Shown here in pieces: positions 6,645 through 63,517 of a stretch of DNA of 64,000 nucleotides. The notes under the pieces are model-generated. The model ran no database searches. It saw only the letters and a program-made list of their open reading frames with translations, and was not told the origin of the DNA. The position numbers and the translations under genes were made by a program. This DNA comes from Aplysia californica (taxonomy: Eukaryota): contig NW_004797276.1 in the NCBI RefSeq assembly GCF_000002075.1, positions 1,915,972 through 1,979,971 of the forward strand. The letters run 5' to 3'. Every line of letters starts with the position of its first letter. Within the stretch, counting starts at the first letter, position 1.

Positions 6645-6779
6645 ACAAAAATAATAAATTGTACAAGATCATTATATACCAAAACAAGCTAGCTACTGTG
6701 TTCTATTTGAAAGAGAACTATCTACGGTACACCTTTTGAAGTAAACACTGGTGTTAGGTACTTTTAAAAATTGTGATCG

Positions 6780-7228: not shown

Positions 7229-7244
7229 CTAAGGTATCAAACTA

Positions 7245-7395
7245 AAAAAAAAAGATGACAGAACTTTGCTAGAGAGCAGGAAAGGAGGTGAAAGTAGACA
7301 ATTTTAGAGAAGAAAATTTTTCAGTTGCTTCCTGGATTCAAACCGAGACCTTTGAATGAGAGGCAACACCTTAACCTCTAGGCCACGAGAGCCAC
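7245..7395 (-). mobile_element. tRNA-derived SINE, head fragment
   Basis: Reverse complement matches the head of the 26399 and 41072 SINE copies (A/B boxes, ttttcttctctaaaattgt). Confidence 0.8.
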
Positions 7396-7479
7396 TGATC
7401 CACTGGAGTGGTCACAGTGGTGTGGGGCTGGTTCATTATCTTGCAATTTATGTAGCCCCACCTCTGTAAATCTGAACTT

Positions 7480-8945: not shown

Positions 8946-8956
8946 TATTCCACCAA

Positions 8957-9111
8957 CAAGTTAGATCAAATACCCCAACTAGCCTACTTACTATCTCACC
9001 ATTGTGATAAGTCTCGGCGGTCGAGTGCTTGCTATCTTCATTTTTGACCTTCTATGTACCACAGCTTGCTGCACACTTCCCAGTTTGAATGTTGTAAACC
9101 TTGAAGAGTTG

Positions 9112-9512: not shown

Positions 9513-10090
9513 TGTACTTGTATTTAGATTTCTGTTCTGGAGTCAAAACAGTCGCTCATGATCTCATCTATTCAGCTGTATTTTTGTCAGCATTTTGCAA
9601 AAACTAAGTAAGCATGATTTGGCCACTCGAGACTAGTCTTATCAATGTGCTTCTTGATTACATCACAAGTGAATAATTTATTACCTGTAATATCATCTTA
9701 AATCTTGTTCATTTATCTTGCTTTTGGTGAAAAAAAAATACATTATCATTATCTTGAATAGAAGTTGAGATATACGGGAGGTGGTTTGCCTGGTTTTAGA
9801 GGTAGAATTAGCGAGAAAATGTCCACAAAGTCAGTGACTTCCAAAGCGGTTTTCTTGGAAACTACGTAACTTTAAACCTAAAGATGATGTTCAGATGATG
9901 ACAGATGCAATCCACACTACAGCGAGCCATGAACTGAACAGGGTTAAGAGGACATCATGCAATGGGTTGCTTTTGAATTGATAACACATACCCGAATCAG
10001 TTACATTTAAGTTGAAATGTTCCCAATGTTTATATCCTCTTTTTAATTTTTTTTTTAACAGAAAGGACTGGCTATATTCTCACCATAGCA

Positions 10091-10219
10091 ATGCACTTCA
10101 CAACCCTGGTTGCTGCGGTGTGTGCTACAGTCTGTGGAGCCTATTCACAGTCCATCGTGTTTGATGACACTCCTGGAATGGGGCGCCAGTTTGATGGAAT
10201 AGGGGGTCTAAGCGCAGGT
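10091..10219 (+). CDS. GALC: GALC copy 1 coding exon 1 (signal peptide, [10 protein letters not shown])
   Basis: Acceptor ttaacag ends at 10061, ATG at 10091, donor GGT|gtacgt. Confidence 0.9.
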
Positions 10220-13200: not shown

Positions 13201-16200
13201 AAATGTTTTAGCATTTGTGGGCTTAATTGTATTATGTTTTGTTTTTTTCTTTTTCCTTCCAGATCTGGAACGAACGGACATATGATATCGGTTACATAAA
13301 GGTAAATGATTAAGTTTTTATCCTTTGATAATTTGTGTTCAATTGTCTGTTTCATCCAAATAAGCTGAAGTAAGTGATTTCTATCCTTTGATGTAGTTGT
13401 CTTATAATTGATAAAAATGTAATAATATTTTCACCATTTGTAGTTGGAACTCACGAAGCAGTGCTTGGTGTATTTATCTGTTGTAATACTTTCTACAGGC
13501 ACTACGCGCGACCTTGGATTCACGAGGATTCCAAAACACACTTGTTATTGCTGCTGATGAAAAGTGGGAGATTGCAAGTGACATTCAGGCAGATCCTGCA
13601 CTGGCCAAAATAGTACATGCTATTGGGTATGTAGAATGCAAATAGGCATTTCCCTTGTACTCTTTGAAAGAGGCATGAAAGTGAAAAGAACGTCAAAGGT
13701 GTCTTTCTGTTACTCATCGTTCACAGAATTTATAATTACTTAAAATCTTTTTGTGTTTTGTCAAACTATCTTTCCTACTCCATTTTGTTTTTACTATATA
13801 ATATTTGTTTTATACCAGAGTGGCATTTATGATCCTCCATGCTACTTGTAAGTAATATAAGTGAGCTGCCTGTTAAAAGAATTAAACATTTTTCATTGCT
13901 AGCCATTTTGAATTCAAAGTCATCTCTGTCATTATGAAAATTCTGCGTGGTTTCTTGACAGGTGTCACTACCCAGGCACTCTTTCTGATCCGGATGCTGT
14001 AAACACAGGGAAACAATTGTGGGCCTCGGAAGATTATAGCTCTTTCAATGATGACGTTGGAGGAGGATGCTGGGCGCGGGTAACTGTTTTGTTCGTCATA
14101 GCTTAGATGTTTTCACGTGTTTTGTGTGTTGCTGTTTTCTTGGTGACGATAGAAAAGAGCATGATTCTTTAAATGGCAGGTACTGGCACTTGATTGTGGT
14201 TGGAGGTTTGGAGGAGGGTACTATATGCACTCACGTGTACTGAACAAGTGGACTCACATCTGAGCATTGATTGTTTCACATGTCTCATGCTTTCTTATGA
14301 TCAATGCAAATGTCTAGCCCCCTCCGGAAAGAAGTAAATAAAAGCAGTATAAAGACATACTGAATGTCTTCAACCCAGCATAACAATGGCAAACAGGTTA
14401 CATCAGACATTTTTTTGTATTTGTAAGTCGCACCTCATGTTTGTTACCAAATTGCGACGATCTCTAATCTTCTTTACCCTTGATTTCTGTTTCTTCCAAC
14501 TAGACAGAATAATTTTTTGTTAAAGGATTTGTTATGCAGCTATGAAAGCTGACTTGTAATGTCCTTTAAGTTTTTTCCTTGTGCTGATAGAGCTGTTCAA
14601 TCCTTTTCTTTTGAAACTTGAAAGTCAAGTTTCTATATGTATGCATAGTCAATGAAAGGGGAGGGGCTGATTTGTTTGTTGATAGCCTTACTATTTTATT
14701 GCAACTTATTTTATTCCCGTACTTGATAAACAGCTATTCACGTATTTATCTAAGTGATATGCATCATTACTTTTTGCTCTTCAGCTCAGTTGTAGGCTGT
14801 TCCTGTCATTGTCGTTAAGTCTTGGGTACAAATAGTTATATAGCATCAGTTTTTTGCTATTTCTCTCTACAAGTGACAGATAATAGAATGAGACTTTGAA
14901 CCTGTGTCCTTACATTCCTATAGTCTGGGCAACACCAAAAGGACAACTTATCGACCTCATTACACAAAATGTAATATGCGGTTCCCATAGGGGGATCAGG
15001 TCGAGTCAGGTCAGTTTGCTAGTCAGATTGAGGGCGCAAAGTGATTACCATGGCACAAGTCGAGTGTGCCCAACTCATCGCCTCAAAAACAAAAGCGTGT
15101 GTTCTCAGGTGACGATTCGGCCCGACCCGACTCGACCGGATCCCATCTGCAATGGGCTCCCGGTATAAGTGGCGAGTTGCTCTGATTTTTTGCATGTGCC
15201 CCTAAAAATCTCGATTTTCGTGCCAATGCGTCAAACATAAAGATGTCTTTTTTATAATTATAATCATTAGTATTTAATTGCAGTCGGGGGGCGGGGGGTG
15301 TCTTTGATTAAAACAAGAAAGGTAGTTCAGCGTTAGTTGGTTTTTTTATTTTTTATTTATCTTATTTTCTTCTTTTGAATTGACTGTGTTTTGCAGCAAG
15401 ACTGAGTAGTTGTCAGTCCAGTGGTTAGTATGGTGACAGTGTGTTTATTTAGATTGACTAATTGCAATATATATGCTATGTGGGAAATTTTTTGCATATC
15501 CTCACAGTCTTTTGCTGTCGCTTTTCTCATTAATCAGCGTGGTTAGATTAATTAATTTACAAACCCTAAAACTACTAAACTATTTCTACAAAGAAGGCGA
15601 TCAAGGTCGTCTCTTTTATTCTATTTAAAAATTCAGAAAAAAAGACAAGACATGCATTAGAACTATCCAGGACTATGCTGCTCGGATGGATCCAAGAAGA
15701 TGAAAATCCAGAAGAAAAATAACTAATACAAAGACGCATAACAATTCCAGTTATACTTCTTTCATATTCAGGTGGCTTGAAAATGTATGTGTAAAGGGGG
15801 GAGGCACCCTCTGCCTATGAACCTGCACTTGGGGATGGGCAGTGACATGCCCATTAGTGCTCTGCAAATTTCTGACTAACCCCTGCAACGACACCCTGTA
15901 TTGTTATGGTTTTAGAATGGTACTGTGCGTGCTATAAAAAGTGTGCGGAGTTGAGTATAATTAGACATCAATTAATAATGATCATAGACAATATCTCTTT
16001 ATATTTGTCGCATATGATCATAGACAATATCTCTTTATATTTGTCGCATATGCACAGGAATCAGGATTATTTAGGTCTTTTAAAATTCATAGGTGCATAC
16101 AAAAAATTAGAGCAAATTGCAACTTAGGTTCTGTGTAATGAGGTCGATAAGTTGTCCATTTGGTGCTGCCCAGATTATAGTAGCTGCTTTTTAAAAAATT

Positions 16201-16560
16201 TATCAGTCATGCTCCTTCATGATAACTGGTTATATCATAAAGTGGCTGTCTTCTTGCACTACATATTTTGGAGTGAGATATACTGAATAAGCTGTTTGTC
16301 AATCATATTTTAAAAATATTTCTGAGTTTTGATTGACGCCTGTACTACTTAAATGTTGCTGTAAAAGAAAAGTAAGACAACGTTTTGCTTGATAAAATTC
16401 AATATCCATTGTCAGTCACCAGAGAAAGAAGAATAAAAAATGATATGATTCTTACCTTGCAAGCTTAAGAAGAATAAAGAATGATATGATTCTTACCTTG
16501 CAAGCTTAAGTACTTCTAGAAGATGTGAATCAATTCTTGGCATCTGTAATAGATGTCTTT

Positions 16561-16624
<64 letters not shown>

Positions 16625-19600
16625 TTCAACGTTGAGAAGCTGTTATTGATCCAGCAACCTTGAGAATAAATAAAATGGATGGAATGGCAAAAATTCACCC
16701 CTATCTGTCAAGGGGATGAATCTTGTGGGACGGATACTTTTTCTGTACCTTTTCATCCTGTTCAGTTACATGTATCTATTGTTTTTACTCTTTTACATTA
16801 TAGACTTCCAAAATTGGTGGCTTTCTTTTTTCTGTAAACATTCTATTGATAGGTGTCACACCCACCCCCCTCTCCTTCCACAAGGACCAGCAAAATCAAT
16901 AAATCCAGCAAAAATCTTTTGCTTTTCCCTGTGCCCTTTCATCTGCATGAAAACAGTATTGTGATCTCGATTTTCTTAAAGTCACCTTTATGATTTTGAC
17001 AATTGTAAAGTAGAAGTCAAAGGTAGAATACTTCTTTAGAAAAAGGAAAGTATGTTTGTTTTTATCAGCTGTTTGCAGAACATGCTGAAAAGTCTGAAAG
17101 TGGTATTGATGATGGTTTTACAGATCTATTTACATCTGTGCCTTTCCTCTTATACCCTGTGCAGACCTGGATCATCTGTTTCATGTTTACTCTCTTCATT
17201 ATCGATTTCCTCGTGCCCTCAGCATTTACCGTAGACTCAAGCTGCATTCTATTAGCGTTATATTATGTATTTAGTTGATTTCCTGATTTTATTTAATGAC
17301 ATCGTGATTTTTATTCCTCAGATTCTAAATCAGAATTATGTCAATGGCTTGATGACAGCGTAAGTAATTTCTTTTTCCTGGTACAGTGGAACTTGGATTC
17401 AACGAAGTCGTCGGGCCTGGCCTTAAATTTTGTTGAATCTAAGTGTTCGTTATAGAAAATACGAGGTTTTGTGTAGATAATTACAGACATTGAGCAAGTA
17501 GTGCATAATGTCGACTTTCTACATAAAAAATATGTTGGTTTCAAATGAGAGGCATTTTCGTTTCTTGATATTTAAACAAATGCGAGAAAATTCCAGAAAA
17601 ATACAACGAACTATACCAAACATACACCGTGCAAAAGGGTCGATTAGTTCAAATGCATGCCTGTGTGATCTATCGTCTACAGCATATTGTTTTCCGAGCA
17701 AGTTATGTTGCTGTGTAGAGCGTAGCATATGGCAGCATGTAATCCCACAGTCCAGCGCACAAGACATCACATAGATCTATGTCAAGACTAACTTATCATT
17801 GTAATATTGATCAGCCAGGGAAAATAATAATGTAACGCGTTTGCATCTCTTCTGATGTTCCACGCCCTTACCACTTCTACTCCCTCACCCAGCTCACACA
17901 CACATACACAGTCGCACGTCACATGTGTGCTTGTCTCTTGGCCGCCTGTCCGACCCCGACACATGCTAAGACATGTGTGCATGCTAACAACGTGTGTGTT
18001 GGTACGAAAGAAGGGCGCTGATTAGTCACATAAGGCAGTTCACCTTGCAAGAGACTTCGTTGAATCTGAGCTTGCTCATTGATGTGTTCTGTGAATCCAA
18101 GTTATTTTTATTGAGTTTTATTAATTAAAAAAAACACACCAGGGGAATCCAACTCTTTTCGTTGAATCCTAATTTTCGTTGAATCCGAGTTCGTTATATG
18201 TGTACTGGAAGCAACTGAAATTGTAATTTTATTCTGTTTCTTTGGAAGTCATGACTCTGTATATTTGTCTTGTACTCTTCCTTCAGGCTTGGTTTTTATA
18301 TGTGATTTGACATGTCCAATATCAGAACAGTCAGAGCCATTTCATAAAATAATTCATCTGTGGACAGCACCATTTCATGGAGCTTGATAGCCAGCTACTA
18401 CGACAACTTGCCGTTCTATGGGGATGGTTTGATGACAGCTGTTGAACCATGGTCAGGCAACTATGTCGTGGAGACACCCATCTGGGTTTCAGGTGAGAAA
18501 CCATTGGACAGTATCTGAATGGTCTATAAGATTTTTTACATGAATTCAGGAGATATATATTGATATGGATACAGATACAATGATTATTGTTTCCTTTCAT
18601 TTTTTATTGCTAATTTCTTGGCAGCTTTCCTTTTATTCTGATCAATTATAAAGAATCTTTAGATAGATAATCTATCTTGATGTAGATGTAAATATCAATG
18701 AAACTGTCCCAATGTCTATTTTTTAAAACATTAAATTGGACTTTGCATCCGGCTCATAAATGATTAGGTTCTCTTCTAGCGTTTTGTTCTGTGCTTTCAA
18801 GAAGTGTTTTTATTTTATTTACACGTGTACTCTGTGATATTTATGGATTTCTGTTTTGCTTTTCAGCCAAGCTACTGTTAATTACAAACAGGGAATCGAT
18901 ATGAATAGTCATTCTATAATGAAAAATATGGAGAGTTTTATGTGTACTTCCTTTTCATTTAGTGAGGAACTTAAATAATAACTATCTTTGTTTATAAATA
19001 TCATTTTGCTGAAATATTCAATTGAACACAAAGTGTTTCTATTTGATTTACACCAGAATCTTTAGAGATGATTTTTTTTTCATTTTTGCAGCACATACAA
19101 CCCAGTTTGCTTTTATTGGCTGGAACTATCTCAAGCATGACTCCGGAGTTGGGAAACTGCCAAAGGGAGGTTCTTACGTGGGTCTTGTCAATCCAACAGG
19201 GACAGAACTTACCATTGTCATTGAAACTATGGTAAATAACCTAGCTCATGTAAATTATATAGTTAGTTTCTTTATGCTGAGCTTAAGAGTGCTTATATGT
19301 GTAAGCTTTGTCTTTGTTCTTGAGGTTTAAGATTTCATAACAATAGGAATTTGTTTGCAAACATAAAAGTTATTATTTTGTCCTGGATGTCAATGAAAAC
19401 AGCACTTGTCTTGGAAAATCTTAAACTTTCTCCTACACATGTGTAAGGTCATGGATTTGTGAACACTGAAACTACAGTCAAACCTGCCCTGACGGCCACC
19501 TCTATAGGACGGCCACCTGTACAAACGGCCACTTTCCATTTCCCCCCTTGCGTTTTTTCTCTATAATTTAACTGTGTAAAACGGGCACCTGTCCAACGCG

Positions 19601-22600
19601 GCCGCGGCCACCATATTTTAACACAAAACCCCTATTACACTAAGCAATAACACCTGTCTTAGACGCCACCTTAGTGACTCCGACCCATGTGTTTGTTTTA
19701 ACATGGCACTCGGTCTTCCTCGTCTCATACATTTAGTTTTATTGTCACTCTTGCGCAAAATCAGCAACAAAATAAAAATAACAAACAAAATACAAACCAA
19801 CAACAACAAAAACAAGAAATGCGGCTATTTTCGATTGAGACTTCAGAAGGGAATGGTTTGTTTTCTTCCTCTTGATCAGTCCTGCCTAAGATGGCCACCT
19901 GTCTTCTACGGCCACTTTTCTCCTCGACAATGGGTGGCCGTCTTACACAGGTTTGACTGTACTTTCCAGTAGAAGTATGAAGTATTACAAAGTAAAATGG
20001 AAAAATGACTCGAGACGTATTGTTCTAGTTCATTATTGTGTAATAGCAGCTTGGGTTTTTTTTCCCCCGAAAGTCTCAGAATCTGTTTCTGTGCTGTTTC
20101 AATTTATTCCTTTTTTTTTACAGAAAATGCATTTTCCTGTTAAATTTTTGTTCATTTTGCTATCTTATTTTTCACTTGATGACTTTAACTTTGCATTATG
20201 CCTTTTTTCGGGATGATTGTTCTGGGTGTTTTTGCGCAACAATTTCCACTTTGTGTCTTTGCTTTTTCTTGTGTGAAAATCGTCTTCACTTAATTCGTTT
20301 TTCAAATTTCCGGAAAACTGAATTCTTTAGCAACAATGTTAAAGGTAAAAATATTGTGATTTTTAAATAATTTATAATCGTTAAAATAGTCAAAATATCA
20401 TTGTAATAATTTTAGTATTAATAATAATCAATAATCATCGTAGTAATAATAATATAGTGACAATAAATAATTTACTTATAAAAATGATGTTTATATGAGT
20501 CGTAGTAGCAATGATATTGGTAATGCTTAAACTATGTCTGTTTTATGGAGCACCGTGATAATTTTATGTTAATGAGGTTTTTTAAAACTCATTTTTATTA
20601 AAGAGTATGTCAAGGGCTATCTTACTGTTCAAGGTTTTGCTGCTTGTTTGTCTTTGACAGACCCATAATCATTCACTGTGTGTTCGACCACCACTGCCAG
20701 CCTACAACGTTGAACCCCAGGTTGTTACTGTTTCATTGGCAGGAAAATTCGTAAGTGTTTTTTAGAATAAGACATAGTATAAGTTGTGCTCACCTTGGAA
20801 AGTATGTTAGGGCAACCAACTATTGTTAAATTGTTTGCTTGGTATGTGAATAACAAACAGGGCATGGTGCCTCTTAATGTACTGATATATCGTCGTGATC
20901 ATGATACGATCAGATCTACAAAACTTTCGATTTTGGTTTTTTTCACGAAATCTCTTCTACAAGACATGTTTCGACATATTAAGACATATTAAGCTAATTA
21001 AAAATGTGTATTCAAATAAGCAACCAAAAGTGGACTTATAAAATTCTATAACAATCAAATTTATAATTCTGCCGTCCTTTTAAAAAATCAGTTTTTATCC
21101 TTTTCCTGTAAAATTTACCTGATGTCACTTATTTGACATCACAACGGTGACAATATGTTGAATGAAGCAAGTACGTGCTTTTTGTGAAATAAGTATGTTA
21201 TAAAACTTTTGTTAATTCAGTACAAGTTTCGTTTTGTTGTGGTACCTTCCTTAGTTTTAGCAGCAAAGTTCTGAGATTTGAAAAGTTCTTGATAAGCCCA
21301 TATGCAGTACAGACATGTTTCATGCTTTTTTTTATATTCATTACGGTGGTACATTTCTTTTCAGTAATGCAATTATTCTAATTTCCCCCCACAGTCCAGC
21401 ATCACCGAAATGAATGTTTGGTACAGCAAACTCAGATTTGATGGTGCCAAGGACACCTTGTTTGAGAAAAGGGACCCAATTAAAGTAAGCGTTTTGTTCT
21501 TTGGAATATATGAGTGTGGTGAATGACAGAAGATGTTAATGGAGCAGTCATTGTAGATTTGTTGGAATTCTTTTCAGTGAGAAAGGGACATTGTTGTTGG
21601 ATATTGTTCCAAAGTGCATGCATATTCATGCACATGTTTTAGGTAGATCTACACGTTTTCTTGCCATGTTTCAAAATGTCATCATACTTCTTTTTTTTTT
21701 TTTCTTTTAAGGTCATATATGTTTATTTGAGAATGCTTGCCAATACCTTCATTATGAAACAGAGTTGTTCATGAGCCGATTCATCGGTACAGACTTTGAT
21801 GTGTTTTTGTTAAGAAGACTGTACGCTTGTCTGACTGGTCAGGTCTACGTGTTTATGTCAAGCCAGGAGAGGAAACTGATCAATGCCAACATTATATCTA
21901 TCAGAATAGCACGAAGTTCAGTAAAAAAAATAATTTTACCTTTGATGCTGTAGATATGCCTCTTTTTATCATGCCATTGGGCATTCATCATCTCCTCAAT
22001 GCTTTGTATACCTTCCCTCACAATGGCAGGTAATAGAAGTGGAAGGTTGTTATGTTTAACATCATGCTCCTTCCTCAGAAGAAATAAAAATTAAAGTGTT
22101 TGAAGAGTCCCATTCACATAATTTTATTATTTAAGACTAAAGAAACCACTCCCAACCATCCTGTGCTCAAAATTTTTATGTAGAGTATTTCAGGTGAGCG
22201 ACACTGAGTAGAGGGAGAGAACCGCGCTACTTAAACTTAAACCTTAAAAAAACCAACTTATTTATTGTCAAAATATCAGGTCAGACACAGTCGAACTGGC
22301 CCCAGTTTAGAAAAACTTCAATTGCCCCCAAACAAAGTCTACAAATCCTGAGGTGTGCCCCCTTCATGACTTTAATCATGGTAGTCATTTAGGAGTTGAT
22401 CTGGCTTCAATATTAGTAGAAATTGACAAGACAGTTTGTCTCGGAGCTTTAGAAAAGTACGCTTATTATTTTTATTATTGCTCTGTATCCGACCTGCCTC
22501 ATTACAAGACACCCAAATTTAACAAGACAAGTCTAACCTAACAATGGATACCTTGTATTTATCATCATTGTCATATTTTTTTCAGTTTGTCAATGGCAAG

Positions 22601-25600
22601 GCACAACTGAGCCTGGGCTTGGATGAGGTCATCACGCTCACGACTATGACCACTGGTCAGAAGGGTGCTTATCCTGAGCCTCCTCCTTCTCAGCCCTTCC
22701 CCCTCCCTTACACAGAGGACTTTGAAAGTAAGGATCATTTGCTCATTTTTCCTTGTGTCGCTGCTTCAACAAAAATGGATCGACTTTTTTATTGGGCTTT
22801 ACTCAGCTCCCAGCTGTGGTTTGGTTGTTTTTGTGGTTGGCTGTTGTTTTTATCCAATTACTAACACTTGTCTGACAGGCAGTATATGGTTCCATCACTT
22901 CCTATCCAAATTCAGATCTTGGTCCACATTGANNNNNNNNNNNNNNNNNNNNNNNNNNNNNNNNNNNNNNNNNNNNNNNNNNNNNNNNNNNNNNNNNNNN
23001 NNNNNNNNNNNNNNNNNNNNNNNNNNNNNNNNNNNNNNNNNNNNNNNNNNNNNNNNNNNNNNNNNNNNNNNNNNNNNNNNNNNNNAATTTCTTAGAGCAT
23101 CAAAATTATTTTTATGCCTGTTTTACCTTACCATTTGAAATCTTTATATAGCATCATATTCTGGCATTATTAACCAAGAAAACCTGGCTAATGCTTTCAT
23201 TACTCCAAAGTTGCAATGAAGCAGAATAGTCATCAAATTTGTGGGCATGTGCAAGCTAAATGTGTTTCATAACAGTTTGGTGAATTTTTACTAAAATTTA
23301 AGTACTTTTTGTCTTTTGAAATAATCTAAAATCTAGCAATGGCAGCCATGTAATGTACATAAGTAAACAAGTATATAACCAGATGTCAGAGAGATAAAAG
23401 ATTATGCCTAGATAAGGATTTGATGATATATTTGAGAAAAGGTTTAAGCCTTGAGTTTGAGGTCAGATAGGCTTTTCTGGGCACTGTGTTGTGCAAACCA
23501 TGTAGCATTTGATTTTTACGTACAATTAGTTCTAGCATGAAAACACAAATAACTACTCCCAACCCAAATTTTGGAGTCTTTTTGATTTGGTACAGAGTAA
23601 AACAAGGACTTACTAATGCTATTCCTTCTAATGCTTTCTCTACCTTATGAAAAGAAAGAAGAAACAAAAAAAAGTGCCAGAGATTTGCAGTTATTGATGA
23701 CCCAGGAGAAATTACTGATTGCAAGGGACGAACAGTCTTTCTTTTTTTGTGTTGACTTTGCACAATATTATTTCATTTAAATATAACTTATTCTTTAGTA
23801 TAAGAATGTAAAAAGAATTGGAAATTATCAAATACTATTGTCATCCATTTCCACATGGAAGGTTACAAACCACCACAGGAACCCCCCAATTTGGCTCAGT
23901 AGTTTGGTGTATATGAAGTGACTGAATTGCCTGGGCCACATAGTCATGTCAATAGCGAAAAAGTCATTTTCGAAAATAAGAATGAACTACTAATGCATAG
24001 AAACAGATGACTCTGGATGACTCATCAAATTCCAAAAGTTCTCAAAAAAGAACGAAATGGGTAAAAAGTGAGAAAAAAAAGAGCTCGCATAGAAGACCTG
24101 GTGTACAGTAAACCTAGTTATCTATACATAATCTGTGCATGCATACCTTTCTGACTGATTTGATACAGCTAATCAGGTTGGCAGCATATTCATAAAAATG
24201 TTTTAAAAGTGTGGATTCTTTTGCGTTCATCTGGAAACATCAAGAAAATGTGAGACTAATTAATTTGAGACGATAGAATTTCAGCTCTTGGAATTAAAGT
24301 TTGTTTCTTTTACTCCTTCCGAAATGTGAAACTTGACTGGAGGGCTAAATGATGATTTTTTCCCCTCCTGGAACAGGAAAATATACTTACATGCTTTAAA
24401 TAAGCTTTTCTGAATTGTAAATGTTCATACTAAGTTGTATTCATGTTCACTCTTTGGACAAGTTAAACCTCTTTACAAGTTGGTTATTATAATGTTTCTC
24501 AGCTACTTGGAGACTAGTCATCTTTTAACAGATTGCAGCAGTAATCCTCATCTAGGTGAAAGGAGTAAAACTTGTCTAGAAATATATGTTTTTCTTTCTT
24601 GATGAAATCAAAAAAGGTATGAGGTAATACCTGCTGATGGGTGTTGGTTTTCAAAAGTTGTTTGTTTAGAATAAATCAATATGTTTTTCACGTCTCTTTC
24701 TGTTGATGTAATAGGGGACAATACTCTTCGCTGTCTTCCCATCATATCTGCAACACACTTTCAGCAATACCAAAGCTTCATGAATACAATCTTATTGATC
24801 ATAGGCTTCTCACTGTATGAAGAACCCTTCAATCTTGCCCAACAAAGTGGAGCATATGAAATCCTTTCTACAAATAACAACAAGTTCGCCCGGCAAATGA
24901 CAATAATGGAGCCAATTCTCTGGAGCAAATTCGGGGGAGTCTGTAAAACTGTCAATGTCATTGGCAGTACTGACTGGTAAGATGCTGCCAGGCTCAGGCC
25001 AGTGTTCTGTTCACCTTCCAACATATGTATGCTTGTGTGCGCCATGACCCAGGCTTGAAAAAAATTAGAAACAGATGCTAACATGTTGCTAATCAGCTTC
25101 AGTTTGTTTTTTAACTTCTGCTCATAGGGGTTTACCAATAGTAGCTTGAGACTTATTACATCAGTTTAGTTGAGAGAGAAAACCTTGAACATAGTCTTTG
25201 GATCGTTTGGGGCGTTTTTTATTCTTAAAATCTCATGGAATTTTTCAGGAAAATCTGACCATACTAATTTTGTTCGATTGAAAGTAATCCAAATTTGAAT
25301 GACTACTTTGGTCTCTAAGAGTTTGGGTTTTTTTGTTTGTTTGTTTTTTCAATTATCTTTCTCTTTGATACATATGTACTTTAAAAACTGCCCTAATGTT
25401 GAAGCAATAGAAGGCCTACAGTAATACAATTGGACAGCATAAATGAATGATTTGCACTAAGTCTAATGAACAGAAAATTATAAACTGCTCACAGAAATGC
25501 ATTTATAAATGTCTCACTCACTCTTTGAAAAAGGGAATCTAAAAAAACCGTTTGCTTGAGACCTGCCACTATCTAGATGACAGAAATAGTGAGGCAACAG

Positions 25601-28600
25601 TTTAGAACATGAGTTGTGTTTGCTTTGCCAAAGATCAGCCTTCCCTTTTTGCACATTCAAGTTTTTCCTTGTTTATTTCCAAGAAACACAAATGCCACCA
25701 CAGCCATTGATTTCGATTTAAAAAGAGATGTTTTTTTAAAAAGAATCAAATGTGAGCACATTTTGATTAAATCATAGTGCCTCCAACAAAGATACACTTC
25801 TGCTGTTGACAAGTCAAATCTTCTGAAAGGAATGTCGAATTTCAAGTCTCTGTCTTCACCCAGTGGGACTGTTTTTACAGATTTCAATAGACCATTAGGT
25901 GGATTGTTATAGAGAGTTCCAAGAAATCATGTTCTTAAGTGTCTGTGACTGAAGAAGAATTTTCACTGTCGCTAACTCAACTATATCAAACCCCTCCCTT
26001 ACCTTATTTAGGCCATATGTGGCCTAAGTAAGCACTCCCTATATCAAATGCATGACTCATGGAAACATTCGCTACACTTATTGTATGACTTCCTACAGGG
26101 ATATTTGATATAAAATACTTGTTATTTTACCTCGCAGTTGGAGTTGGCATATATCTAATATTTTGCTTTATTTTTTTCCCTTCCTTCAATTTTACTTACT
26201 GTTCAGAATTACTTTTTTCTAATGTTAAATTTTCAGAGACCTGCATCTGCAGCGGATTTTGCTTAAATTGAACAACTAATAGAAAAAAATGTTTCAAGTA
26301 ATATAATATATCTCTTTTTGTATCTCCTTAACTTAATTTGTTTAATAATGTATATATACCCTGTATTGTTGAAAATCAAGTGATTAAAAAGATGATTTGG
26401 GGGTTCTCGTGGTCGAGAGGTTACAGTGTTCGACTCTCATTCAATAGGTCCCGGGTTCGAATTCGGATAGAGACGTAACATTTTCTTCTCTAAAATTGTT
26501 CTCCTTTCACCTTCTTTCCTGCTGTCTAACAATATTTTGTTGTCTGCCTTTGTCTCAACGTCCTGCGCCCACCCCCTCACCTCCTTTGCCCCCTCCTCCA
26601 GGCTCCTAACTCTTTCTGCTGCCTTTCTACTGCTACTCCTTGGCTCCTTCTTACTGCTGTCTTTCAGCCACAACCCTGATCATATGGTAAATTATAAGAT
26701 CTAACACCTACCTGGCCTTCTCGGATAAGGGCGAAAAATCTCAAAGGTAGCGTGTGCAAGTTGCGCATGTTAATGACGCTTGGTGGTCCAAAATCGATAA
26801 GAATAGGTCTCGCCGCCAACCGAACAAAATTTTAACATTTCCTACCAACTGAAAATGTTAATTGTGTCCCACGTGCTCATATGACCTTATGCAGTTGCGA
26901 GCACCAAAAAACACTTACCCAAAAAAAATAAAAAATTTCTGTTTACTTTTGTATCTTTTGTTTTTGTAGCACTGATATTATATTAGACTAGATGAACTAT
27001 ATTTCTATGACAGAGGATATATTCACCTGTCATTTGAGCTTACAATTTTGTTTTGAAGAAAGGTCTCGAAAAAAAAGGTATATTCTATTTTGGTGGTGTC
27101 AGACGATGTAAGTGCCTAATGATGTATATATCTTGAAGAATACGAGAAAAATAGCTCTAGTTCTTTATTATTTGCTCCATCTATTCTTGGCACTAGTACC
27201 TTTCAGATTCATTTTTTTCCTTAAGTCGATTTATTCCTATCACCAGGACTGACATCTATGTGGCAGTAGACTTCCAACTGCCTGTTATAAACGGGTCACT
27301 CGGTGCCTTTGTGGCTGCACGGGTGGACCGGGGAGGTGTTGAGGCCTTTGCAGCTCATGGAATCTTCTTGTTTGTCTTCCCGGATAGGTACATTGTGACT
27401 AACGACTTTGGTAAGATTGACAACTATCCACCCTTTTCTTATTAAGAGATTATTGTTGTTTATGGTCAGGTGTAAAAAGAAAAATCCTCTTTTGCATTAT
27501 TCGACAATGCATGCCAACACTTGTTCTGGTTGTAAACCACATTGAGCATAGAGTAGAATGTGGGTATACGCTGTCTAAATACAACCATTATTATTATTAT
27601 TGTTATCATCCTTTTTATAATTATTATTATCACGTATTAACAAAGCTATTAAGCCAAGTATTGCGTAGATACAAGATTCCTTTTGCACTCGTTTTGTTTA
27701 AATGGGCTTCATTTTTACTTGTGTTTGTTGAAGAAACATGTCTCCCATTTCTAACAAGATATGAACTTTGGATTTTTGATAGCAGTGGTAGGAAATGGGG
27801 GAGAGAGGAGGTGTTTTTGCCAAAGTTGTTGGTAAACTTTTTTTTATTTCACCTCTTTGATAACTTTATAGCTCATTTAAGATGTGAAATGTTTAACAAC
27901 AAAAAGCCTTTTCTAATTTTTTTTAGCCCGTACAAAAACCCTCAAGAACGGGTCTCTGGTCTTCGAGACAGGAGAGTGGCACAGACTGGGTCTGCTGGTT
28001 CAGGTAAACCAATTTTTAGCTATACTGTGCGGGCTTCCAGTCAAAATCATAGTATTGGACCATTATAATTTTATGGGTATCTGAACAGAGAAGTTATCTG
28101 TGGAAGTTGAAATAGATGTCAAAATGGTTTGATATGACTGTAGGCCTATACATGCATGTACATTTTTATAAAGGGATGTGATATTTTAATATGAGGAGAT
28201 GTCGAGCCAACAGACTGAGCATAAGAGGGTGCTAATGTATACTGCAACATAACAATTTATTCAACCTTAAAAATCATCTTGCCAGTTTGTTTCTTTCTTT
28301 TCCATGTGGCCAGGGGATAAGACAAAGTGCATCATTATATCCAAAATTATCCCATCTGGGTCAATTAAAAACAAACTTCATTTTATTTTTGTCTTTGAAC
28401 TTGTTTTTCTCTCTGTGCTCAAACATTTGCTTGATTATTTCTCTCATCAGGATGGCAACGTTCAGGGAAGCTTTGATAAGAAAATTCTGTTCAACATGCC
28501 TGTCCCAGCTCTGCCCGTGAGTGGTTTTGCCGCTATCGGCACAGACACATTTGGACTGGCAGATTTCGATAACCTACAGCTGACTGGACCTTCCGAAGGG

Positions 28601-28663
28601 AGCAAGATAATGTCGAAGCATTTACACTCCAAGTCTTTGTACTTTGAGAAAGAACATCACTAA
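10091..28663 (+). CDS. GALC: Galactocerebrosidase-like (GH59) copy 1, complete, 18 coding exons, 2052 nt / 683 aa
   Basis: Join 10091-10219,10967-11035,11694-11757,12246-12334,12678-12842,13263-13301,13499-13626,13962-14079,17322-17359,18368-18492,19092-19231,20661-20750,21395-21484,22586-22727,24805-24976,27247-27410,27927-28003,28451-28663. All introns are GT-AG and the frame stays open. Signal peptide plus GALC motifs [61 protein letters not shown] (acid/base Glu), WASED (nucleophile Glu), GCWARILNQNY, EPWSG, CVRP, GFAAIGT..FDN. Confidence 0.95.
10967..11035 (+). CDS. GALC: GALC copy 1 exon 2 ([23 protein letters not shown])
   Basis: TACTAAC branch point, pyrimidine tract, AG; donor AAG|gtattt; 69 nt. 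Confidence 0.95.
11694..11757 (+). CDS. GALC: GALC copy 1 exon 3 ([21 protein letters not shown])
   Basis: cag| ... G|gtaagc; 64 nt. Confidence 0.95.
12246..12334 (+). CDS. GALC: GALC copy 1 exon 4 ([30 protein letters not shown])
   Basis: cag| ... AAG|gtttgt; 89 nt. Confidence 0.95.
12678..12842 (+). CDS. GALC: GALC copy 1 exon 5 ([17 protein letters not shown]...IDYVG)
   Basis: tttcag| ... GGG|gtgagt; 165 nt. Confidence 0.95.
13263..13301 (+). CDS. GALC: GALC copy 1 exon 6 ([13 protein letters not shown], catalytic acid/base Glu)
   Basis: Pyrimidine tract + cag| ... AAG|gtaaat; 39 nt. Confidence 0.95.
13499..13626 (+). CDS. GALC: GALC copy 1 exon 7 ([10 protein letters not shown]...IVHAIG)
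   Basis: tacag| ... GG|gtatgt; 128 nt. Confidence 0.93.
13962..14079 (+). CDS. GALC: GALC copy 1 exon 8 (CHYPGT...[21 protein letters not shown], nucleophile Glu)
   Basis: gacag| ... CGG|gtaact; 118 nt. Confidence 0.95.
14921..16177. mobile_element. Non-autonomous DNA transposon in copy 1 intron 8
   Basis: ~50 bp TIRs (tagtctgggcaacaccaaaaggacaacttatcgacctcattacaca / tgtgtaatgaggtcgataagttgtccatttggtgctgcccagatta), TA duplication; empty site ccTAgt near 50309 in copy 2. Confidence 0.88.
15978..16049 (+). repeat. 36-bp tandem duplication (2 copies)
   Basis: atgatcatagacaatatctctttatatttgtcgcat x2. Confidence 0.9.
16430..16510 (+). repeat. ~41-bp tandem duplication (2 copies)
   Basis: agaataaa(a/g)aatgatatgattcttaccttgcaagcttaag x2; single copy in paralog near 50624. 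Confidence 0.85.
16564..16621. repeat. (TA)n microsatellite
   Basis: Direct. Confidence 0.95.
17322..17359 (+). CDS. GALC: GALC copy 1 exon 9 ([13 protein letters not shown])
   Basis: cctcag| ... GC|gtaagt; 38 nt. Confidence 0.93.
17384..18204. mobile_element. Tc1/pogo-type MITE in copy 1 intron 9
   Basis: ta|cagtggaacttggattcaacgaa left end; repeated ttcgttgaatcc subterminal motifs at the decayed right end; absent from copy 2. Confidence 0.7.
18368..18492 (+). CDS. GALC: GALC copy 1 exon 10 ([11 protein letters not shown]...[16 protein letters not shown])
   Basis: gacag| ... G|gtgaga; 125 nt. Confidence 0.95.
19092..19231 (+). CDS. GALC: GALC copy 1 exon 11 (AHTTQF...GGSYV...LTIVIETM)
   Basis: tgcag| ... 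ATG|gtaaat; 140 nt. Confidence 0.95.
19475..19959. mobile_element. Tc1/mariner-type MITE (GGCCAC subterminal repeats) in copy 1 intron 11
   Basis: TA|CAGTCAAACCTG ... CAGGTTTGACTG|TA; absent at the paralogous site near 54118. Confidence 0.92.
20661..20750 (+). CDS. GALC: GALC copy 1 exon 12 ([13 protein letters not shown]...GKF)
   Basis: gacag| ... TTC|gtaagt; 90 nt. Confidence 0.95.
21395..21484 (+). CDS. GALC: GALC copy 1 exon 13 ([13 protein letters not shown]...DPIK)
   Basis: cacag| ... AAA|gtaagc; 90 nt. Confidence 0.93.
22586..22727 (+). CDS. GALC: GALC copy 1 exon 14 (FVNG...[22 protein letters not shown])
   Basis: ttcag| ... A|gtaagg (phase 1); 142 nt. Confidence 0.95.
23862..23954 (+). 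pseudogene. Dead remnant of alternative exon 15a in GALC copy 1
   Basis: Near-identical to the 5' half of 58192-58381, but with CAG>TAG at 23900-23902. The 3' half and the donor are deleted; homology jumps to ~58735 of copy 2. Confidence 0.9.
24805..24976 (+). CDS. GALC: GALC copy 1 exon 15b, the only surviving variant ([18 protein letters not shown]...[22 protein letters not shown])
   Basis: catag| ... TG|gtaaga; 172 nt, phase 1-2. Confidence 0.93.
26399..26935 (+). mobile_element. Full-length tRNA-derived SINE
   Basis: A box GTGGTCGAGAGG, B box GGTTCGAATTC, body, tail tatgaccttatgcagttgcgagc, A-rich end; family members at 7245, 39808 and 2060. Confidence 0.88.
27247..27410 (+). CDS. GALC: GALC copy 1 exon 16 (TDIYVAVDF...[10 protein letters not shown]...GIFLFVF)
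   Basis: accag| ... G|gtaaga; 164 nt. Confidence 0.93.
27927..28003 (+). CDS. GALC: GALC copy 1 exon 17 (ARTKTLKNG...[11 protein letters not shown])
   Basis: ctaat branch point, poly-T, tag| ... CAG|gtaaac; 77 nt. Confidence 0.9.
28451..28663 (+). CDS. GALC: GALC copy 1 terminal exon 18 (DGNVQG...[18 protein letters not shown]...EKEHH*)
   Basis: atcag| ... TAA at 28661-28663. Confidence 0.93.
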   Translation, partial: DGNVQGSFDKKILFNMPVPALPVSGFAAIGTDTFGLADFDNLQLTGPSEGSKIMSKHLHSKSLYFEKEHH

Positions 28664-32984: not shown

Positions 32985-34000
32985 GACGGTGACTGTGGGT
33001 CCGGAGATCGATTGATTAGACCTATCCGGGCTCAGAGGGTTCGCCCATAGTGTGGGCACAGGTGTTGGACTTCTTGTGGTAGAGGTAGGTCTGGATTTGT
33101 GTACGTTGCATTTTCGTTTGGCTTAGGGGATGCGCTTGGCTTCTGCTGCTTTGGCTCCCTTAGTTTGCAGCACCAGGCTGGACGAGCTACGGCCAGTGTT
33201 CCAGTGTTTCCCAGGAGTCGTTCGTGATTACTAGTTCTTTTAGTGAGACTTTGAGGCAGTTCTTGAAACGTTTTATTTTTCTGCCCTCTGACTGAGCGCT
33301 TGCCATGAAACAGCTCTCCACACATCAGCTGTTTAGGAAACCAGCTGTTCGCCATTCTGACCACGTGGCCAGCCCATCTGGAGGGGTGTGTAGATGCTGG
33401 GAATTCTGGCCCGCTCTTATCCCTATCCAAACGCTCTGGGGTCATTTTGTATCCCCAGTGTTGTATTCTCCACATTTTAGAATACTTCTTGTGAAAGATC
33501 TCTGTGAAACTTTCAGTTTTTCTCAAAAAAATCATTTTGACAGACTGCTATGTAAAGCGTACGGATCGGATTAACGAGTAAATTTCTTCTTTGGAAAGTG
33601 GTTGCACAGAGTTCCCACGTCGTTTGGATACGATAGCAAAACACGACGCACGGATAGAGTTAAACATCCTTGTCTGGGGCTTTGTCCTGTCATCGGATGC
33701 GGAAGATTTTACGGAAACAGCTCAGGTGGAGTCGATTGAGCTGCTTGGCTTGTCTGCTGTAGACAGTCCAGGTCTCGCTGGTGTAAAGAAGGATGATAAA
33801 AACCACTACCCGGTAGAGCGTTGTGGAGAGGCTGAGTCCTCTGCGCTCCCAGACATTCTTGCGAGCCTCCTAAAGGCGGCGCTGGCCTTAGCAGCTCTGT
33901 TGTTAATTTCAGCTTATGAAATTTACAGTACGTGTCCTGCCCAGGTAGATAAAGTTGTCAGCTGCTTGGAATTTCTGTTCCCCTCACCATGATTTTTGGC
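32985..34000 (-). mobile_element. RTE/BovB-like LINE 3' fragments
   Basis: QLNRLHLSCFRKI (near 33740), RWAGHVVRM...PKQLMCGEL..GKRS, and a CPH.GR...RIGL zinc-finger-like end. Confidence 0.8.
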
Positions 34001-60400: not shown

Positions 60401-63400
60401 TGTGTATAGATATTTCAAACAAAGCTATCAAAGTGGGTTTTTTTAGCAATTATATGGTGAAATGACACCCCATTGTAACATGTATACCTGTTTCAGGGAT
60501 CGGCATGCTTGCACAGAATGAGTTATAACTTTCCAGTTTATGTTTTGACATTAATTTTAATCAGTTGCTAGTGATAGAATTGTTAGTATCTTCTAAGTGT
60601 AATTCTATTTATCTATCTTTTTTATTTTATTTTAGGGGAGTTTTAAACCAAACATGGTTACACCAAAAACAGACACTGATATTTTTTTCTTTCTTTGTCT
60701 TTTTAAGAAAACTAGACAAGCCGAAATGCTCACATGTCTAATCAGAAAAGAATTTCGAGGTTATGTCGACTAAATCATCACTAGCAACACTCACATAACA
60801 CAATTAAAATTATCAAGGCCCCGAGTTTCAAGATAGCAAAGAGAAGAAAGAGATATGAGAATGCAAGTGTCAGTTGCAGGCCGGAGAGTAGCGTGGCCAG
60901 TTTACTGTGTGCCTACATTTATCACACACACTTTAATGGGTGTCAGCGTTCTCAATGTAACAGTGAAGTTGATTTGTGGGAGAAGTGCTGAAAAGCAGTA
61001 ACTGTACATTACCTTTTAAAAACTTACATGGTTTTGTTGAAATTGAGGAACTGTTTTCACATTTGAGTAGAGTTGTACATTATTCGAGACCGGGCCCAGA
61101 TGTACTCTGGACGAGGCCACAAGAGGTTGCCGCTTACCTGTCTGCCTGCGGCTGACTGTCGCCCTCCTAACGGAGGCCAGCCAGAAGTAGAAGAAGAAGA
61201 AGGTGTACATTATTTTCAGTTTCCTTTTCAGTGTCAGTCCCATGATTAAAAGAAGAAACATCCAAGAACTACCAGGGAAAGCCCTAAATTTCTATAATAA
61301 TGTGTTTTCTCAGCTTACCAAGCAGCTCAGGAGCCAAATTTATTGGCTCCTCAAATTGGGTCTTTTGAGGTAGTGAAATCCCAGAATGCCTCTCATAACA
61401 TGACTGCTCGTCAAACTGTTCAAGTTCCGCCTCTAAAGTGGTGCCCCTTCACTTTGAGCTTCCCATATGCTGTTATAGGTTCTAATTGGTAAGCAGTCTG
61501 TGATTACATATTTTTCTACTCTGATTTGAAGATCTGGCATAAAGATCAGGTAATATCCATAAGATAAGTTGTTAAAAGCAAAAAATTATTGTTGTTAAAG
61601 GCAAATGATTCTAACTTTTGTTTCTTGAGGAGTGCTGTCAAGTGCACACCTAAGGTCATACTTTTTCAAGGAAATTGTTTCACATGGAGCTGGCTGGCAG
61701 AAGTCTGTTATAAATCTTTTATTAAAAATCTTCTGAAATCAAAACAAAAATGGAAAAGGGAAAAGAAGATATTTCTTGTCATTGCATTGAGTAAGTGGCA
61801 GAATAAGACAAGATTTTTTTTAAAACTGTTCTATCATGTATGAGACTGGACAGATTCTAAACCAGGCCTTCAGATATTCCTTCAGATTTGTTTGCTTTTC
61901 CTTTCCATTTACATGCGCAACCCAAGACCATCATTTTTTTCCTGTTCTCTACTCTTCTGTTGATACTTATATCTATAAAAAAGAATAAAAATGTGTAATG
62001 CAAATTTTGTTTGACCAACAAATGGAGCAGACTGAACACCACACTCAATGAACCCAGAGTACCATGCTGTGGACCATTTGTTCATCCCTTCAAGTCATTT
62101 TTACAAGGACATAATAACATAGTATATTGTATATTTACTTGACTTGCCAGTTTTGGGCCAGTGTGCTGATGTCTTTGGTACTGGCTGCTTGTTGCTCTCA
62201 TTATGTCTACTGGTCCCATGCTCGGCTGATAAATCTGACAGTTCATCCGCTCTCCTCAAAGTTGTTGTTTTTTGTGTGGTAATCTCCAAGAAAAGCAGAT
62301 CCTAAATCACACGCTTTCTCATCTAAGTAAGTGCAAACTGCACTTGCTCATTTACTTGAAGATGTTTTAGAATATGAAGCTAAAGTTGGTATTGGGTTTT
62401 TTTTGTTGATGTTTTTTAAAAAAAAATGAAATAGACATGTTCTGACTATTGTAAGGTGATTAGCGATTTATGTTTATCAAAATTGTGCTGCAGAAGTTAT
62501 GAATGCCCAATGTCATAAAAATGTGTAGATCAATGAAATTAGTCTCAGCTAATATCCGACCTTTTAGGGGATCTAGTGAGAAGAGAAAAGCAGAGTAAAT
62601 GATATCTCCTCCGCACACCATCCACGACTTTTAAAAACTTTTCTCTTGTCCAGCAGTCTTCCTTCAACCAGTATTATTGTCCCTGCACTTTACAGTTGGT
62701 TTCTTGTGTTCTGTTCTTAATGAAAATAATGACTGACTGAGTGGAGGGAAACTTCTTATATTTGCCTTACTTTAAGAAAGTTTTATGGTTTGATACCAAT
62801 TCAACTCATGTTTGGATAAATTGAATGAGCCAAACTATTTGACTAAGGCTGGACATTCTTTCATATGTTTTCTACTTAATGCTTTATGTTTGTACTTCCG
62901 AACTCCCCCTCTCAGACATGTCTGGGGTATTACATATGACTAGGGTCTCCTAGTTTCATCCTGTATGTTCTTGACATTTTTATATGATCTTTCTGTCTTT
63001 TTCATTTTATATCTTTTAACTTAAATTCACAATTTTTACTTCACTGTTTGTACACTTTAGACTTTCTATTTTTCAAATCTTCATATTTTTCTCTTTAGAG
63101 AAAGTGGAGCTTGCTAATGAATCTTGTGTAGAATGATGTTTTCGATACATGTACCACAATACCACACAGTAGCTCTATTTTATTTAATTATTTTTGTCAC
63201 TGGTAAGTAAGTTGTTGATTTTCTTTTCCCTCACCACCCCCCCCCTCTTTTTTGTTTTTAGATTGCCTATTTATTCAAGAAAATTATTAATGCTCATGAA
63301 GAGTAATGGTGAATCATTATTGCCATGTGAATCTTTGTCCTCCAGAATTTTGATAGTATTCATTCGTTTTTCTCACAATATTTGCACACTGTTTTCAATG

Positions 63401-63517
63401 TAAGAATATGGACTGCTGATTGCAAAAAGGACCTGATTTTAGTCAGAAATAAAATCGAACATGTGCGGGGCTACTTTGGTCTCTAGGAGCTTTTTTTTTC
63501 CATTATCTTTCTCTTTG

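What the first reader, a model, noticed from the sequence alone, without database searches (positions are those of the whole stretch)
23862..25290. After gene duplication, copy 1 lost two of the three alternative exons and is locked on 15b
Seen: copy 1 exon 15a has CAG>TAG (23900) and a ~450 bp deletion removing its 3' half and donor (missing the equivalent of ~58285-58735). At ~25300 copy 1 reads aatttgaatga|ctactttggtctcta, whereas copy 2 has ~3.55 kb between these anchors (59915-63467), including exon 15c. Inference: 15c is far more diverged from 15a/15b than the paralogs are from each other, so it predates the duplication and copy 1 deleted it. This converts a splice isoform into a dedicated gene (subfunctionalisation by loss of alternative splicing).
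Basis: partly seen in the sequence, partly recalled or inferred. Interest (0 to 1): 0.82.

Follow-up and report, generated by a model that had tools for sequence, protein, structure and literature searches.

The report
GALC duplicate that lost two alternative exons
One of three tandem copies of a galactocerebrosidase gene has lost two of its three interchangeable versions of one exon, so it can only make one protein form; this is a clean example of an evolutionary pattern that is already known, and nothing yet shows that the copy is expressed.

Summary
Copy 1 (window ~10085-28609) and copy 2 (~41707-67402) are tandem paralogues of a GH59 galactocerebrosidase.

- **Copy 2:** it has three homologous, same-phase exon-15 variants, 15a, 15b and 15c.
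- **Copy 1:** it keeps an intact 15b. Its 15a has a TAG at 23900 and lacks about 0.45 kb, including the donor. A clean 3,554-bp deletion at 25302|25303 removed 15c.

These are losses in copy 1, not gains in copy 2. A third tandem copy, just outside the window and the outgroup by intron identity, still carries sequence from both ends of the 3.55-kb block. An older paralogue on contig C20 has orthologous 15b and 15c.

The rest of copy 1's reading frame is open and under purifying selection (pN/pS 0.26).

"Subfunctionalisation" is only partly supported:
- Copy 2 still has 15b, so the loss is one-sided.
- Copy 3 independently lost 15a and 15c too.
- Copy 1 shows relaxed features: the first ATG is lost, one codon is deleted in a conserved glycine motif, two conserved cysteines are lost, and its lectin exons evolve almost neutrally.
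- No RNA read or contig showed copy 1's 15b.

Isoform separation after gene duplication is a known kind.

The parts
22583..22727 (+). Copy 1 exon 14 (coding block; donor GT at 22728)
   Evidence: 98% aa identity to copy 2 exon 14. The donor is identical in both copies. The joints seen in RNA contigs start at 22727.
23862..23955 (+). Copy 1 remnant of exon 15a. The acceptor is kept, there is a TAG at 23900-23902, and the 3' half and donor are missing.
   Evidence: It differs from copy 2's 15a at 7 of 94 nt.
23956..23986 (.). Scar of the ~0.45-kb deletion. Copy 2 58286-58761 has no counterpart here.
   Evidence: blastn block ends; sequences read.
24805..24976 (+). Copy 1 exon 15b, the only usable exon 15 left. 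It has 8 copy-1-specific substitutions, 5 of them amino-acid changes, including the loss of the conserved W-C cysteine.
   Evidence: Pfam PF21708 positions 1-46.
25302..25303 (.). Junction of the clean 3,554-bp deletion that removed exon 15c
   Evidence: Three-way alignment with copy 2 and copy 3; blastn.
27247..27385 (+). Copy 1 exon 16 (coding block of the lectin domain). It has 4 nonsynonymous and 0 synonymous copy-1-specific changes, including GGC to GGV.
   Evidence: Pfam PF21708 positions 49-92, 34.9 bits.
10085..10219 (+). Copy 1 exon 1 (the end coordinate is approximate, inferred from copy 2's 138-nt exon 1 minus the 3-nt deletion). The first ATG is changed to ATA, with a second in-frame ATG two codons later. 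One codon is deleted in the GGLSGGG motif. The donor GTAAGT is changed to GTACGT.
   Evidence: Alignments.
58192..58381 (+). Copy 2 exon 15a, intact
   Evidence: A 14-to-15a joint seen in X4 contigs is attributable to copy 2.
59422..59593 (+). Copy 2 exon 15b, intact
59917..63470 (.). The block present in copy 2 and absent from copy 1. Its outer parts, 59917-60477 and 62041-63469, are also present in copy 3.
61314..61488 (+). Copy 2 exon 15c, intact. It is orthologous to the C20 paralogue's second exon-15 variant.

Best explanation
The window holds two of three tandem paralogues of a GH59 galactocerebrosidase-like gene.

The ancestral gene of this cluster carried a cassette of homologous, same-phase alternative versions of exon 15. 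This exon encodes the first ~46 positions of the C-terminal lectin domain.

After the latest duplication, copy 2 kept 15a, 15b and 15c. Copy 1 lost 15a through a nonsense change and a ~0.45-kb deletion that removed the donor. It lost 15c through one clean 3,554-bp deletion. That leaves 15b as a constitutive exon.

Shown:
- the lesions themselves;
- their polarity, which is loss in copy 1;
- the open reading frame of the rest of copy 1, with purifying selection on its branch.

Inferred: copy 1 still works as a 15b-only enzyme gene. The loss is one-sided, because copy 2 still encodes 15b. It is therefore better described as fixation of one isoform in a redundant duplicate, with relaxed or changed constraint on its lectin domain, than as completed subfunctionalisation.

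The older tandem copy 3 reached the same 15b-only state through different deletions.
For: - **Duplication and lesions:**
- **Outgroup order:** intron identity is 83-86% for c1-c2, 75-80% for c2-c3 and 73-78% for c1-c3.
- **Copy 3 and the block:** copy 3 shares the sequence just inside both breakpoints of the 3.55-kb block but lacks the central 60477-62041.
- **C20 paralogue:** its 15b-like exon is 60% aa identical and its 15c-like exon 69%, about 3.3 kb apart. Nucleotide similarity is confined to the exons.
- **Exon tree:** 15c groups with C20_15c at 97/88.
- **Genome-wide search:** a-type exons occur only in copy 2 and, broken, in copy 1. c-type exons occur only in copy 2 and C20.
- **Copy 1 integrity:** exons e1 to e17 have no stops or frameshifts, and AG/GT sites are kept.
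- **Selection:** the copy 1 branch has 22 synonymous and 20 nonsynonymous changes, pN/pS 0.26, p = 2e-5 against neutrality.
- **Family:** Pfam PF02057 and PF21708 hits.
Against: - **No transcription evidence for copy 1.** Two poly(A) raw-read runs gave no reads on exons 14, 15b or 16. In the X4 contigs, exon 14 carries copy 2's three diagnostic letters, and no contig covers copy 1's 15b. Contigs drop rare variants, so this is not proof of silence.
- **Exon 1 changes.** Copy 1 lost its first ATG, one codon of the conserved GGLSGGG motif, and the +4 A of the exon-1 donor.
- **Lectin exons.** Exons 15b and 16 show 3 synonymous and 9 nonsynonymous changes, pN/pS 0.87. Both otherwise conserved cysteines are lost.
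- **Excess nonsynonymous change.** Copy 1 has 20 nonsynonymous changes against 8 in copy 2 (p = 0.036).
- **Exon skipping.** An exon-15-skipping joint, 22727 to 27247, exists in X4. It is out of frame and cannot be assigned to a copy.
Confidence: 0.6

Rival explanations
1. Copy 1 is a redundant duplicate on its way to becoming a pseudogene. On this reading the exon losses are two of several degenerative lesions, and copy 1 makes little or no functional enzyme.
For: - The first ATG is changed to ATA, one codon is deleted in a conserved glycine motif, and the exon-1 donor is weaker.
- Two conserved cysteines are lost.
- The lectin exons have pN/pS 0.87, and copy 1 has 20 nonsynonymous changes against 8 in copy 2.
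- No RNA signal was seen on copy 1's 15b in four runs.
- About 5.4 kb (3590-8957) upstream of the gene has no counterpart at that place in copy 2.
Against: - All 17 tested coding blocks are open and keep their splice sites.
- Overall pN/pS is 0.26, significantly below neutral.
- A second in-frame ATG lies two codons downstream.
- About 570 bp directly upstream of the ATG is still collinear with copy 2.
- The RNA runs sampled barely express any GALC copy, so their silence says little.
Confidence: 0.27
2. After being limited to 15b, copy 1's lectin domain has been evolving under positive selection towards a new specificity or partner. This would be neofunctionalisation rather than isoform partitioning.
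For: - All 8 substitutions in 15b since the c1/c2 split are on the copy 1 branch, and 5 are nonsynonymous.
- Exon 16 has 4 nonsynonymous and 0 synonymous changes.
- Two cysteines that are conserved in every other variant and species fragment are lost together, and a new cysteine appears nearby.
Against: A pN/pS of 0.87 on 12 changes cannot be told apart from relaxed constraint. There is no structural or functional test.
Confidence: 0.1
3. The difference is a gain in copy 2, by insertion of a 3.55-kb block carrying a new exon, or an assembly artefact, rather than a loss in copy 1.
For: The pairwise comparison alone cannot tell an insertion from a deletion.
Against: - Copy 3 shares both ends of the block.
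- C20 has an orthologous 15c whose divergence (76% nt) is similar to that of 15b (71% nt).
- Both junctions lie in contiguous sequence without N runs and with ~15% divergent flanks.
Confidence: 0.03

Closest known systems
Splice isoform separation after gene duplication, for mutually exclusive homologous exons (Abascal, Tress and Valencia 2015, PMC4494069; Lambert et al. 2015, PMC4417111)
   Same: An ancestral gene had tandem homologous alternative exons. After duplication, a paralogue keeps only one of them, so an isoform becomes a gene.
   Different: - In the published cases each paralogue keeps a different exon. Here the loss is one-sided: copy 2 keeps all three, and copies 1 and 3 both keep the same one, 15b.
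- It is a three-exon cassette in a recent tandem array of an invertebrate lysosomal hydrolase, not a product of vertebrate whole-genome duplication.
- The lesions are still readable, because a pseudo-exon remains.
Vertebrate galactocerebrosidase GALC (GH59; mouse structure described in PMC5764952 and PMC5031207)
   Same: - Pfam GH59 catalytic and C-terminal lectin domains are present.
- The WNER and SED motifs that hold the two catalytic glutamates are present in copy 1. Placing the glutamates in these motifs is from memory.
   Different: - As far as I recall, vertebrate GALC is a single gene with one exon for this segment.
- Here there are at least five loci in one genome, and up to three alternative versions of the first lectin-domain exon.
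- The substrate is unknown. The animal is probably a mollusc, which has no myelin.

Membership tests
GH59 galactocerebrosidase family | Pfam PF02057 (GH59 catalytic region) matches above the curated cut-off | tested here: met
   Whole-genome six-frame scan: copy 1 exons score 60.9 and 45.8 bits. Copy 1 exon 5 alone scores 63.6 bits against a cut-off of 27.
GH59 galactocerebrosidase family | C-terminal lectin domain PF21708 | tested here: met
   Copy 1 exon 16 scores 34.9 bits against a cut-off of 27. The exon-15 variants score 21-28 bits, all on profile positions 1-46.
GH59 galactocerebrosidase family | Both catalytic glutamates present | tested here: met
   IWNER and LWASEDY motifs are intact in copy 1. 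Assigning the glutamates to these motifs rests on my recall of the mouse GALC structure, not on a tool.
GH59 galactocerebrosidase family | Beta-galactosidase activity on galactolipids | not testable with these tools
   This needs an enzyme assay.
Mutually exclusive homologous exon cassette | Tandem homologous exons with the same phase and canonical splice sites, where none or two together shift the frame | tested here: met
   The exons are 190, 172 and 175 nt, all 1 mod 3, with AG/GT sites and 35-39% pairwise aa identity. Skipping gives a stop after 7 codons.
Mutually exclusive homologous exon cassette | RNA shows each variant joined to exons 14 and 16, one at a time | tested here: inconclusive
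   Only a 14-to-15a joint, attributable to copy 2, and a 14-to-16 skip were seen in X4 contigs laid on copy 1.
Subfunctionalisation of splice forms after duplication | The ancestor had the alternative exons before the duplication | tested here: met
   Copy 3 keeps the block flanks. C20 has 15b and 15c orthologues. For 15a this is only inferred, from its 35-40% identity to every other variant.
Subfunctionalisation of splice forms after duplication | Complementary retention: each paralogue keeps a different exon, so both are needed | tested here: not met
   Copy 2 keeps 15a, 15b and 15c intact. Copies 1 and 3 both keep 15b.
Subfunctionalisation of splice forms after duplication | The reduced paralogue is expressed and functional | tested here: inconclusive
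   The frame is open and pN/pS is 0.26, but no copy-1-specific exon reads were seen.

The most novel reading that the evidence does not exclude
Two tandem duplicates, copy 1 and copy 3, independently threw away 15a and 15c and kept the same exon 15b, while the middle copy keeps the full three-exon cassette. On this reading the cluster uses gene duplication to raise or separately regulate the dose of one isoform. Copy 1 then remodelled its lectin domain, with paired loss of two conserved cysteines, towards a new partner or substrate.
Probability: 0.2. Interest if true: 0.55.

Novelty: new member of a known kind. Interest (0 to 1): 0.38.

Why it matters
[quoted passage not shown] Here a recent tandem array still shows each step: a pseudo-exon with its nonsense codon, two clean deletion junctions, an outgroup copy that sets the polarity, and a second, independent reduction to the same exon. 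That makes it a good teaching and test case. Copy-specific expression and enzyme assays of the 15a, 15b and 15c forms could show whether isoform fixation came before, or merely accompanies, relaxed constraint. It does not reveal a new mechanism.

Tried and rejected
- **Representative-library search with exon 15c.** It returned only 22 short exon-sized fragments, at most 50% identical. There was no full-length relative and no close outgroup.
- **Word search with copy 1's 15b peptide, hoping for spliced transcript fragments.** It found no candidate. This is uninformative because of the length window.
- **Search of a full-length spliced protein model.** As a result I could not retrieve the annotated isoforms of this locus.
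- **A 530-aa open frame reported around copy 1 exon 4.** I checked it as a possible long query; the real ORF is 97 aa.
- **PDB sequence search with 15c.** No hit.
- **Remnants of 15c in copy 1, of 15a and 15c in copy 3, and of 15a in C20.** None was found.
- **RNA test.** The poly(A) runs do not express these genes detectably, and the contig run is dominated by copy 2.
- **Insertion in copy 2 and assembly artefact.** Both were considered and rejected; see the rival explanations.

Full report
**What is in the window.**
- blastn of the first against the second half of the window gives one collinear series of matches, 2768-25719 against 37271-63940, at 77-90% identity. This is a tandem duplication of a whole gene.
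- A six-frame scan of the whole assembly with Pfam PF02057 (GH59) finds three tandem copies on this contig. Copy 1 and copy 2 are in the window. Copy 3 starts about 13 kb beyond its end.
- The same scan finds a pair on contig C20 and one on C41.
- The C20 pair is 99.5% identical over 12 kb on either side of an assembly gap, so I treat it as one gene.
- The assembly size and contig number (927,310,431 bases, 4,332 pieces) match my memory of the Aplysia californica reference. That identification is recalled, not tested.

**The cassette in copy 2.**
- Three exons follow exon 14 (coding block 56889-57032, donor after 57033): 15a at 58192-58381 (190 nt), 15b at 59422-59593 (172 nt) and 15c at 61314-61488 (175 nt).
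- Each has an AG acceptor and a GT donor, each length is 1 mod 3, and each is open in the same phase.
- They are 35-39% identical to one another as protein.
- All three match positions 1-46 of Pfam PF21708, the C-terminal lectin domain of galactocerebrosidase.
- Skipping exon 15 altogether gives a stop after seven codons.

**The observation in copy 1.** It is correct in every particular.
- The 15a homologue begins at 23862 with its acceptor intact. It reads TAG at 23900-23902 where copy 2 has CAG.
- It loses homology at 23955. Homology resumes at 23987, corresponding to copy 2 58762. About 0.45 kb containing the 3' half of the exon and its donor is therefore gone.
- Exon 15b (24805-24976) is intact.
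- At 25302|25303 copy 1 reads ...TTTGAATGA|CTACTTTGG. In copy 2 the same anchors end at 59916 and begin at 63471, so 3,554 bp including 15c are absent.
- No N run touches either junction.
- I left the N runs in intron 14 of both copies (22933-23085 and 57290-57424) as they are.

**Polarity: loss, not gain.**
- I fetched 40 kb downstream of the window plus the C20 and C41 loci.
- Intron identity is 83-86% for copy 1 against copy 2, 75-80% for copy 2 against copy 3, and 73-78% for copy 1 against copy 3. Copy 3 is therefore the outgroup.
- Copy 3 continues to align with copy 2 beyond both of copy 1's breakpoints. The aligned parts are copy 2 59917-60477 and 62041-63469. The block is therefore ancestral, and copy 1 has a clean deletion.
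- The C20 paralogue is 76.5% aa identical to copy 2 over the shared exons. It carries a 15b-like exon (60% identical) and, 3.3 kb further on, a 15c-like exon (69% identical).
- At the DNA level only these two exons still align, at 71% and 76%. That fits vertical descent of both.
- An exon tree groups 15c with C20's 15c (97/88), and the 15b exons with C20's 15b (95/78).
- Genome-wide, c-type exons exist only in copy 2 and C20. a-type exons exist only in copy 2 and, broken, in copy 1.

**The origin of 15a is less certain.**
- Copy 3 lacks about 0.9 kb around it.
- In the tree 15a sits on a long branch beside the b clade.
- Its 35-40% identity to every other variant makes an origin after the copy 3 split implausible. 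Loss in copy 3 is therefore inferred, not shown.

**A second, independent reduction.** Copy 3 lacks the central 60477-62041 of the block, which holds 15c, and the 15a segment. Its breakpoints differ from copy 1's, and it keeps a 15b that is 98% identical to copy 2's. The cluster therefore consists of one full-cassette gene flanked by two 15b-only genes.

**Is copy 1 still a gene?**
- Seventeen coding blocks from exon 1 to exon 17 are open, 85-100% identical to copy 2 (95.7% overall), with AG/GT sites preserved.
- I polarised the changes with copy 3, counted exon by exon and summed. The copy 1 branch has 22 synonymous and 20 nonsynonymous changes: pN/pS 0.26, p = 2e-5 against neutrality. Copy 2 has 17 and 8: pN/pS 0.14. 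Copy 1 has therefore been under purifying selection for most of its history.

There are also marks of relaxation in copy 1:
- The first ATG is ATA, with a second in-frame ATG two codons on.
- One codon is deleted in the conserved GGLSGGG motif.
- The exon-1 donor changed from GTAAGT to GTACGT.
- All eight substitutions in 15b since the split are on copy 1's branch.
- Exons 15b and 16 together have 3 synonymous and 9 nonsynonymous changes, pN/pS 0.87. This differs from the rest of the gene at Fisher p = 0.04.
- The two cysteines found in every other variant, paralogue and foreign fragment, W-C in exon 15 and GGC in exon 16, are both replaced in copy 1.

**RNA.**
- Two poly(A) raw-read runs gave no read on exons 14, 15b or 16. 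They hit only a repeat at 25840-27008.
- In the contig run X4, the exon-14 contig carries exactly the three letters that distinguish copy 2 (22651, 22668, 22681; compare).
- A 22727-to-23862 joint (14 to 15a) is laid for only about 30 nt, so I attribute it to copy 2.
- A 22727-to-27247 joint (exon 15 skipped, out of frame) also exists. It cannot be assigned to a copy, because the flanking letters are shared.
- No run showed copy 1's 15b.
- Contigs drop rare variants, so this is absence of evidence. The claim that copy 1 is an expressed, dedicated 15b gene remains untested.

**Other species.**
- Fragments found with exon 15c led to two foreign contigs.
- One (L022) has a single exon 15 between exons 14 and 16, and it is closest to the c type.
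- The other (L023) has two tandem exon-15 variants about 200 bp apart.
- Duplication of this exon is therefore not unique to this genome. No close outgroup was available.

**Comparison with what is known.**
- Retention of one of several mutually exclusive homologous exons by a paralogue after duplication is documented. Abascal et al. 2015 (PMC4494069) describe 11 events of isoform separation in vertebrates. Lambert et al. 2015 (PMC4417111) report widespread subfunctionalisation of splice forms.
- The defining feature of those cases is complementary retention. It is not met here, because copy 2 keeps everything. The locus works like the first half of that process: one isoform is fixed in a redundant copy.
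- The lectin domain, together with the TIM barrel and the beta-sandwich, contacts the saposin A dimer that sits over the GALC active site (PMC5764952). Swapping or fixing its first segment could therefore matter for function. I did not test this here.

- For that reason I could not retrieve annotated full-length isoforms of this locus.

**Verdict.** "Subfunctionalisation" is only partly supported. This is a new member of a known kind, made more interesting by the parallel reduction in copy 3 and by the paired cysteine loss in copy 1.

Noticed in passing
L012-L014 (window-equivalent coordinates ~76683-101700; G000:C6:1992654-2017670): A third tandem GALC copy lies just beyond the window. It independently lacks 15a (a ~0.9-kb gap) and 15c (a ~1.56-kb gap; copy 2 60477-62041 corresponds to only 35 nt in copy 3). 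It keeps a 15b that is 98% identical to copy 2's. Its exon 17 was not found in the 40 kb fetched.
   Followed up: partly
window 24924-24926 (15b) and 27338-27339 (exon 16): Copy 1 replaces both cysteines (W-C to W-S, GGC to GGV). These are conserved in all other paralogues, in all three exon-15 variants and in the foreign fragments P0001-P0022. A new cysteine appears six residues after the lost one. This may be the paired loss of a lectin-domain disulfide; no structure was modelled.
   Followed up: partly
window 10085-10230: In copy 1 exon 1 the first ATG is changed to ATA, one codon is deleted in the GGLSGGG motif, and the donor GTAAGT is changed to GTACGT. About 570 bp directly upstream of the ATG is still collinear with copy 2, so the proximal promoter has not been replaced.
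   Followed up: partly
window 22727 to 27247 (joint in run X4): RNA-like contigs contain an exon 14 to exon 16 junction that skips every exon 15. It shifts the frame and gives a stop after 7 codons. Its depth (54.8) is comparable to that of the exon-14 contig (81). Which copy it comes from cannot be told.
   Followed up: partly
window 25840-27008: A repeat in copy 1's intron 15 reaches very high depth in RNA-like runs, up to ~280,000 in X4, and is also present in a second organism's runs. Part of it (26399-26806) matches copy 2's upstream region 40664-41072 in inverted orientation at 80%. It is probably a transcribed transposable element.
   Followed up: no
L015-L018 (G000:C20:2333000-2372999): Two GALC copies on C20 are 99.5% identical over 12 kb and are separated by a 100-N gap. 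This is probably assembly redundancy rather than two genes. The complete one has 15b-like and 15c-like exons at local 33522-33689 and 36887-37057.
   Followed up: partly
L023:642-1141 and L022:10088-10258: In two other, unidentified species, one GALC gene has two tandem exon-15 variants only ~200 bp apart and another has a single, c-like exon 15.
   Followed up: partly
window 22933-23085 and 57290-57424: Masked N runs sit at homologous places in intron 14 of both copies.
   Followed up: no
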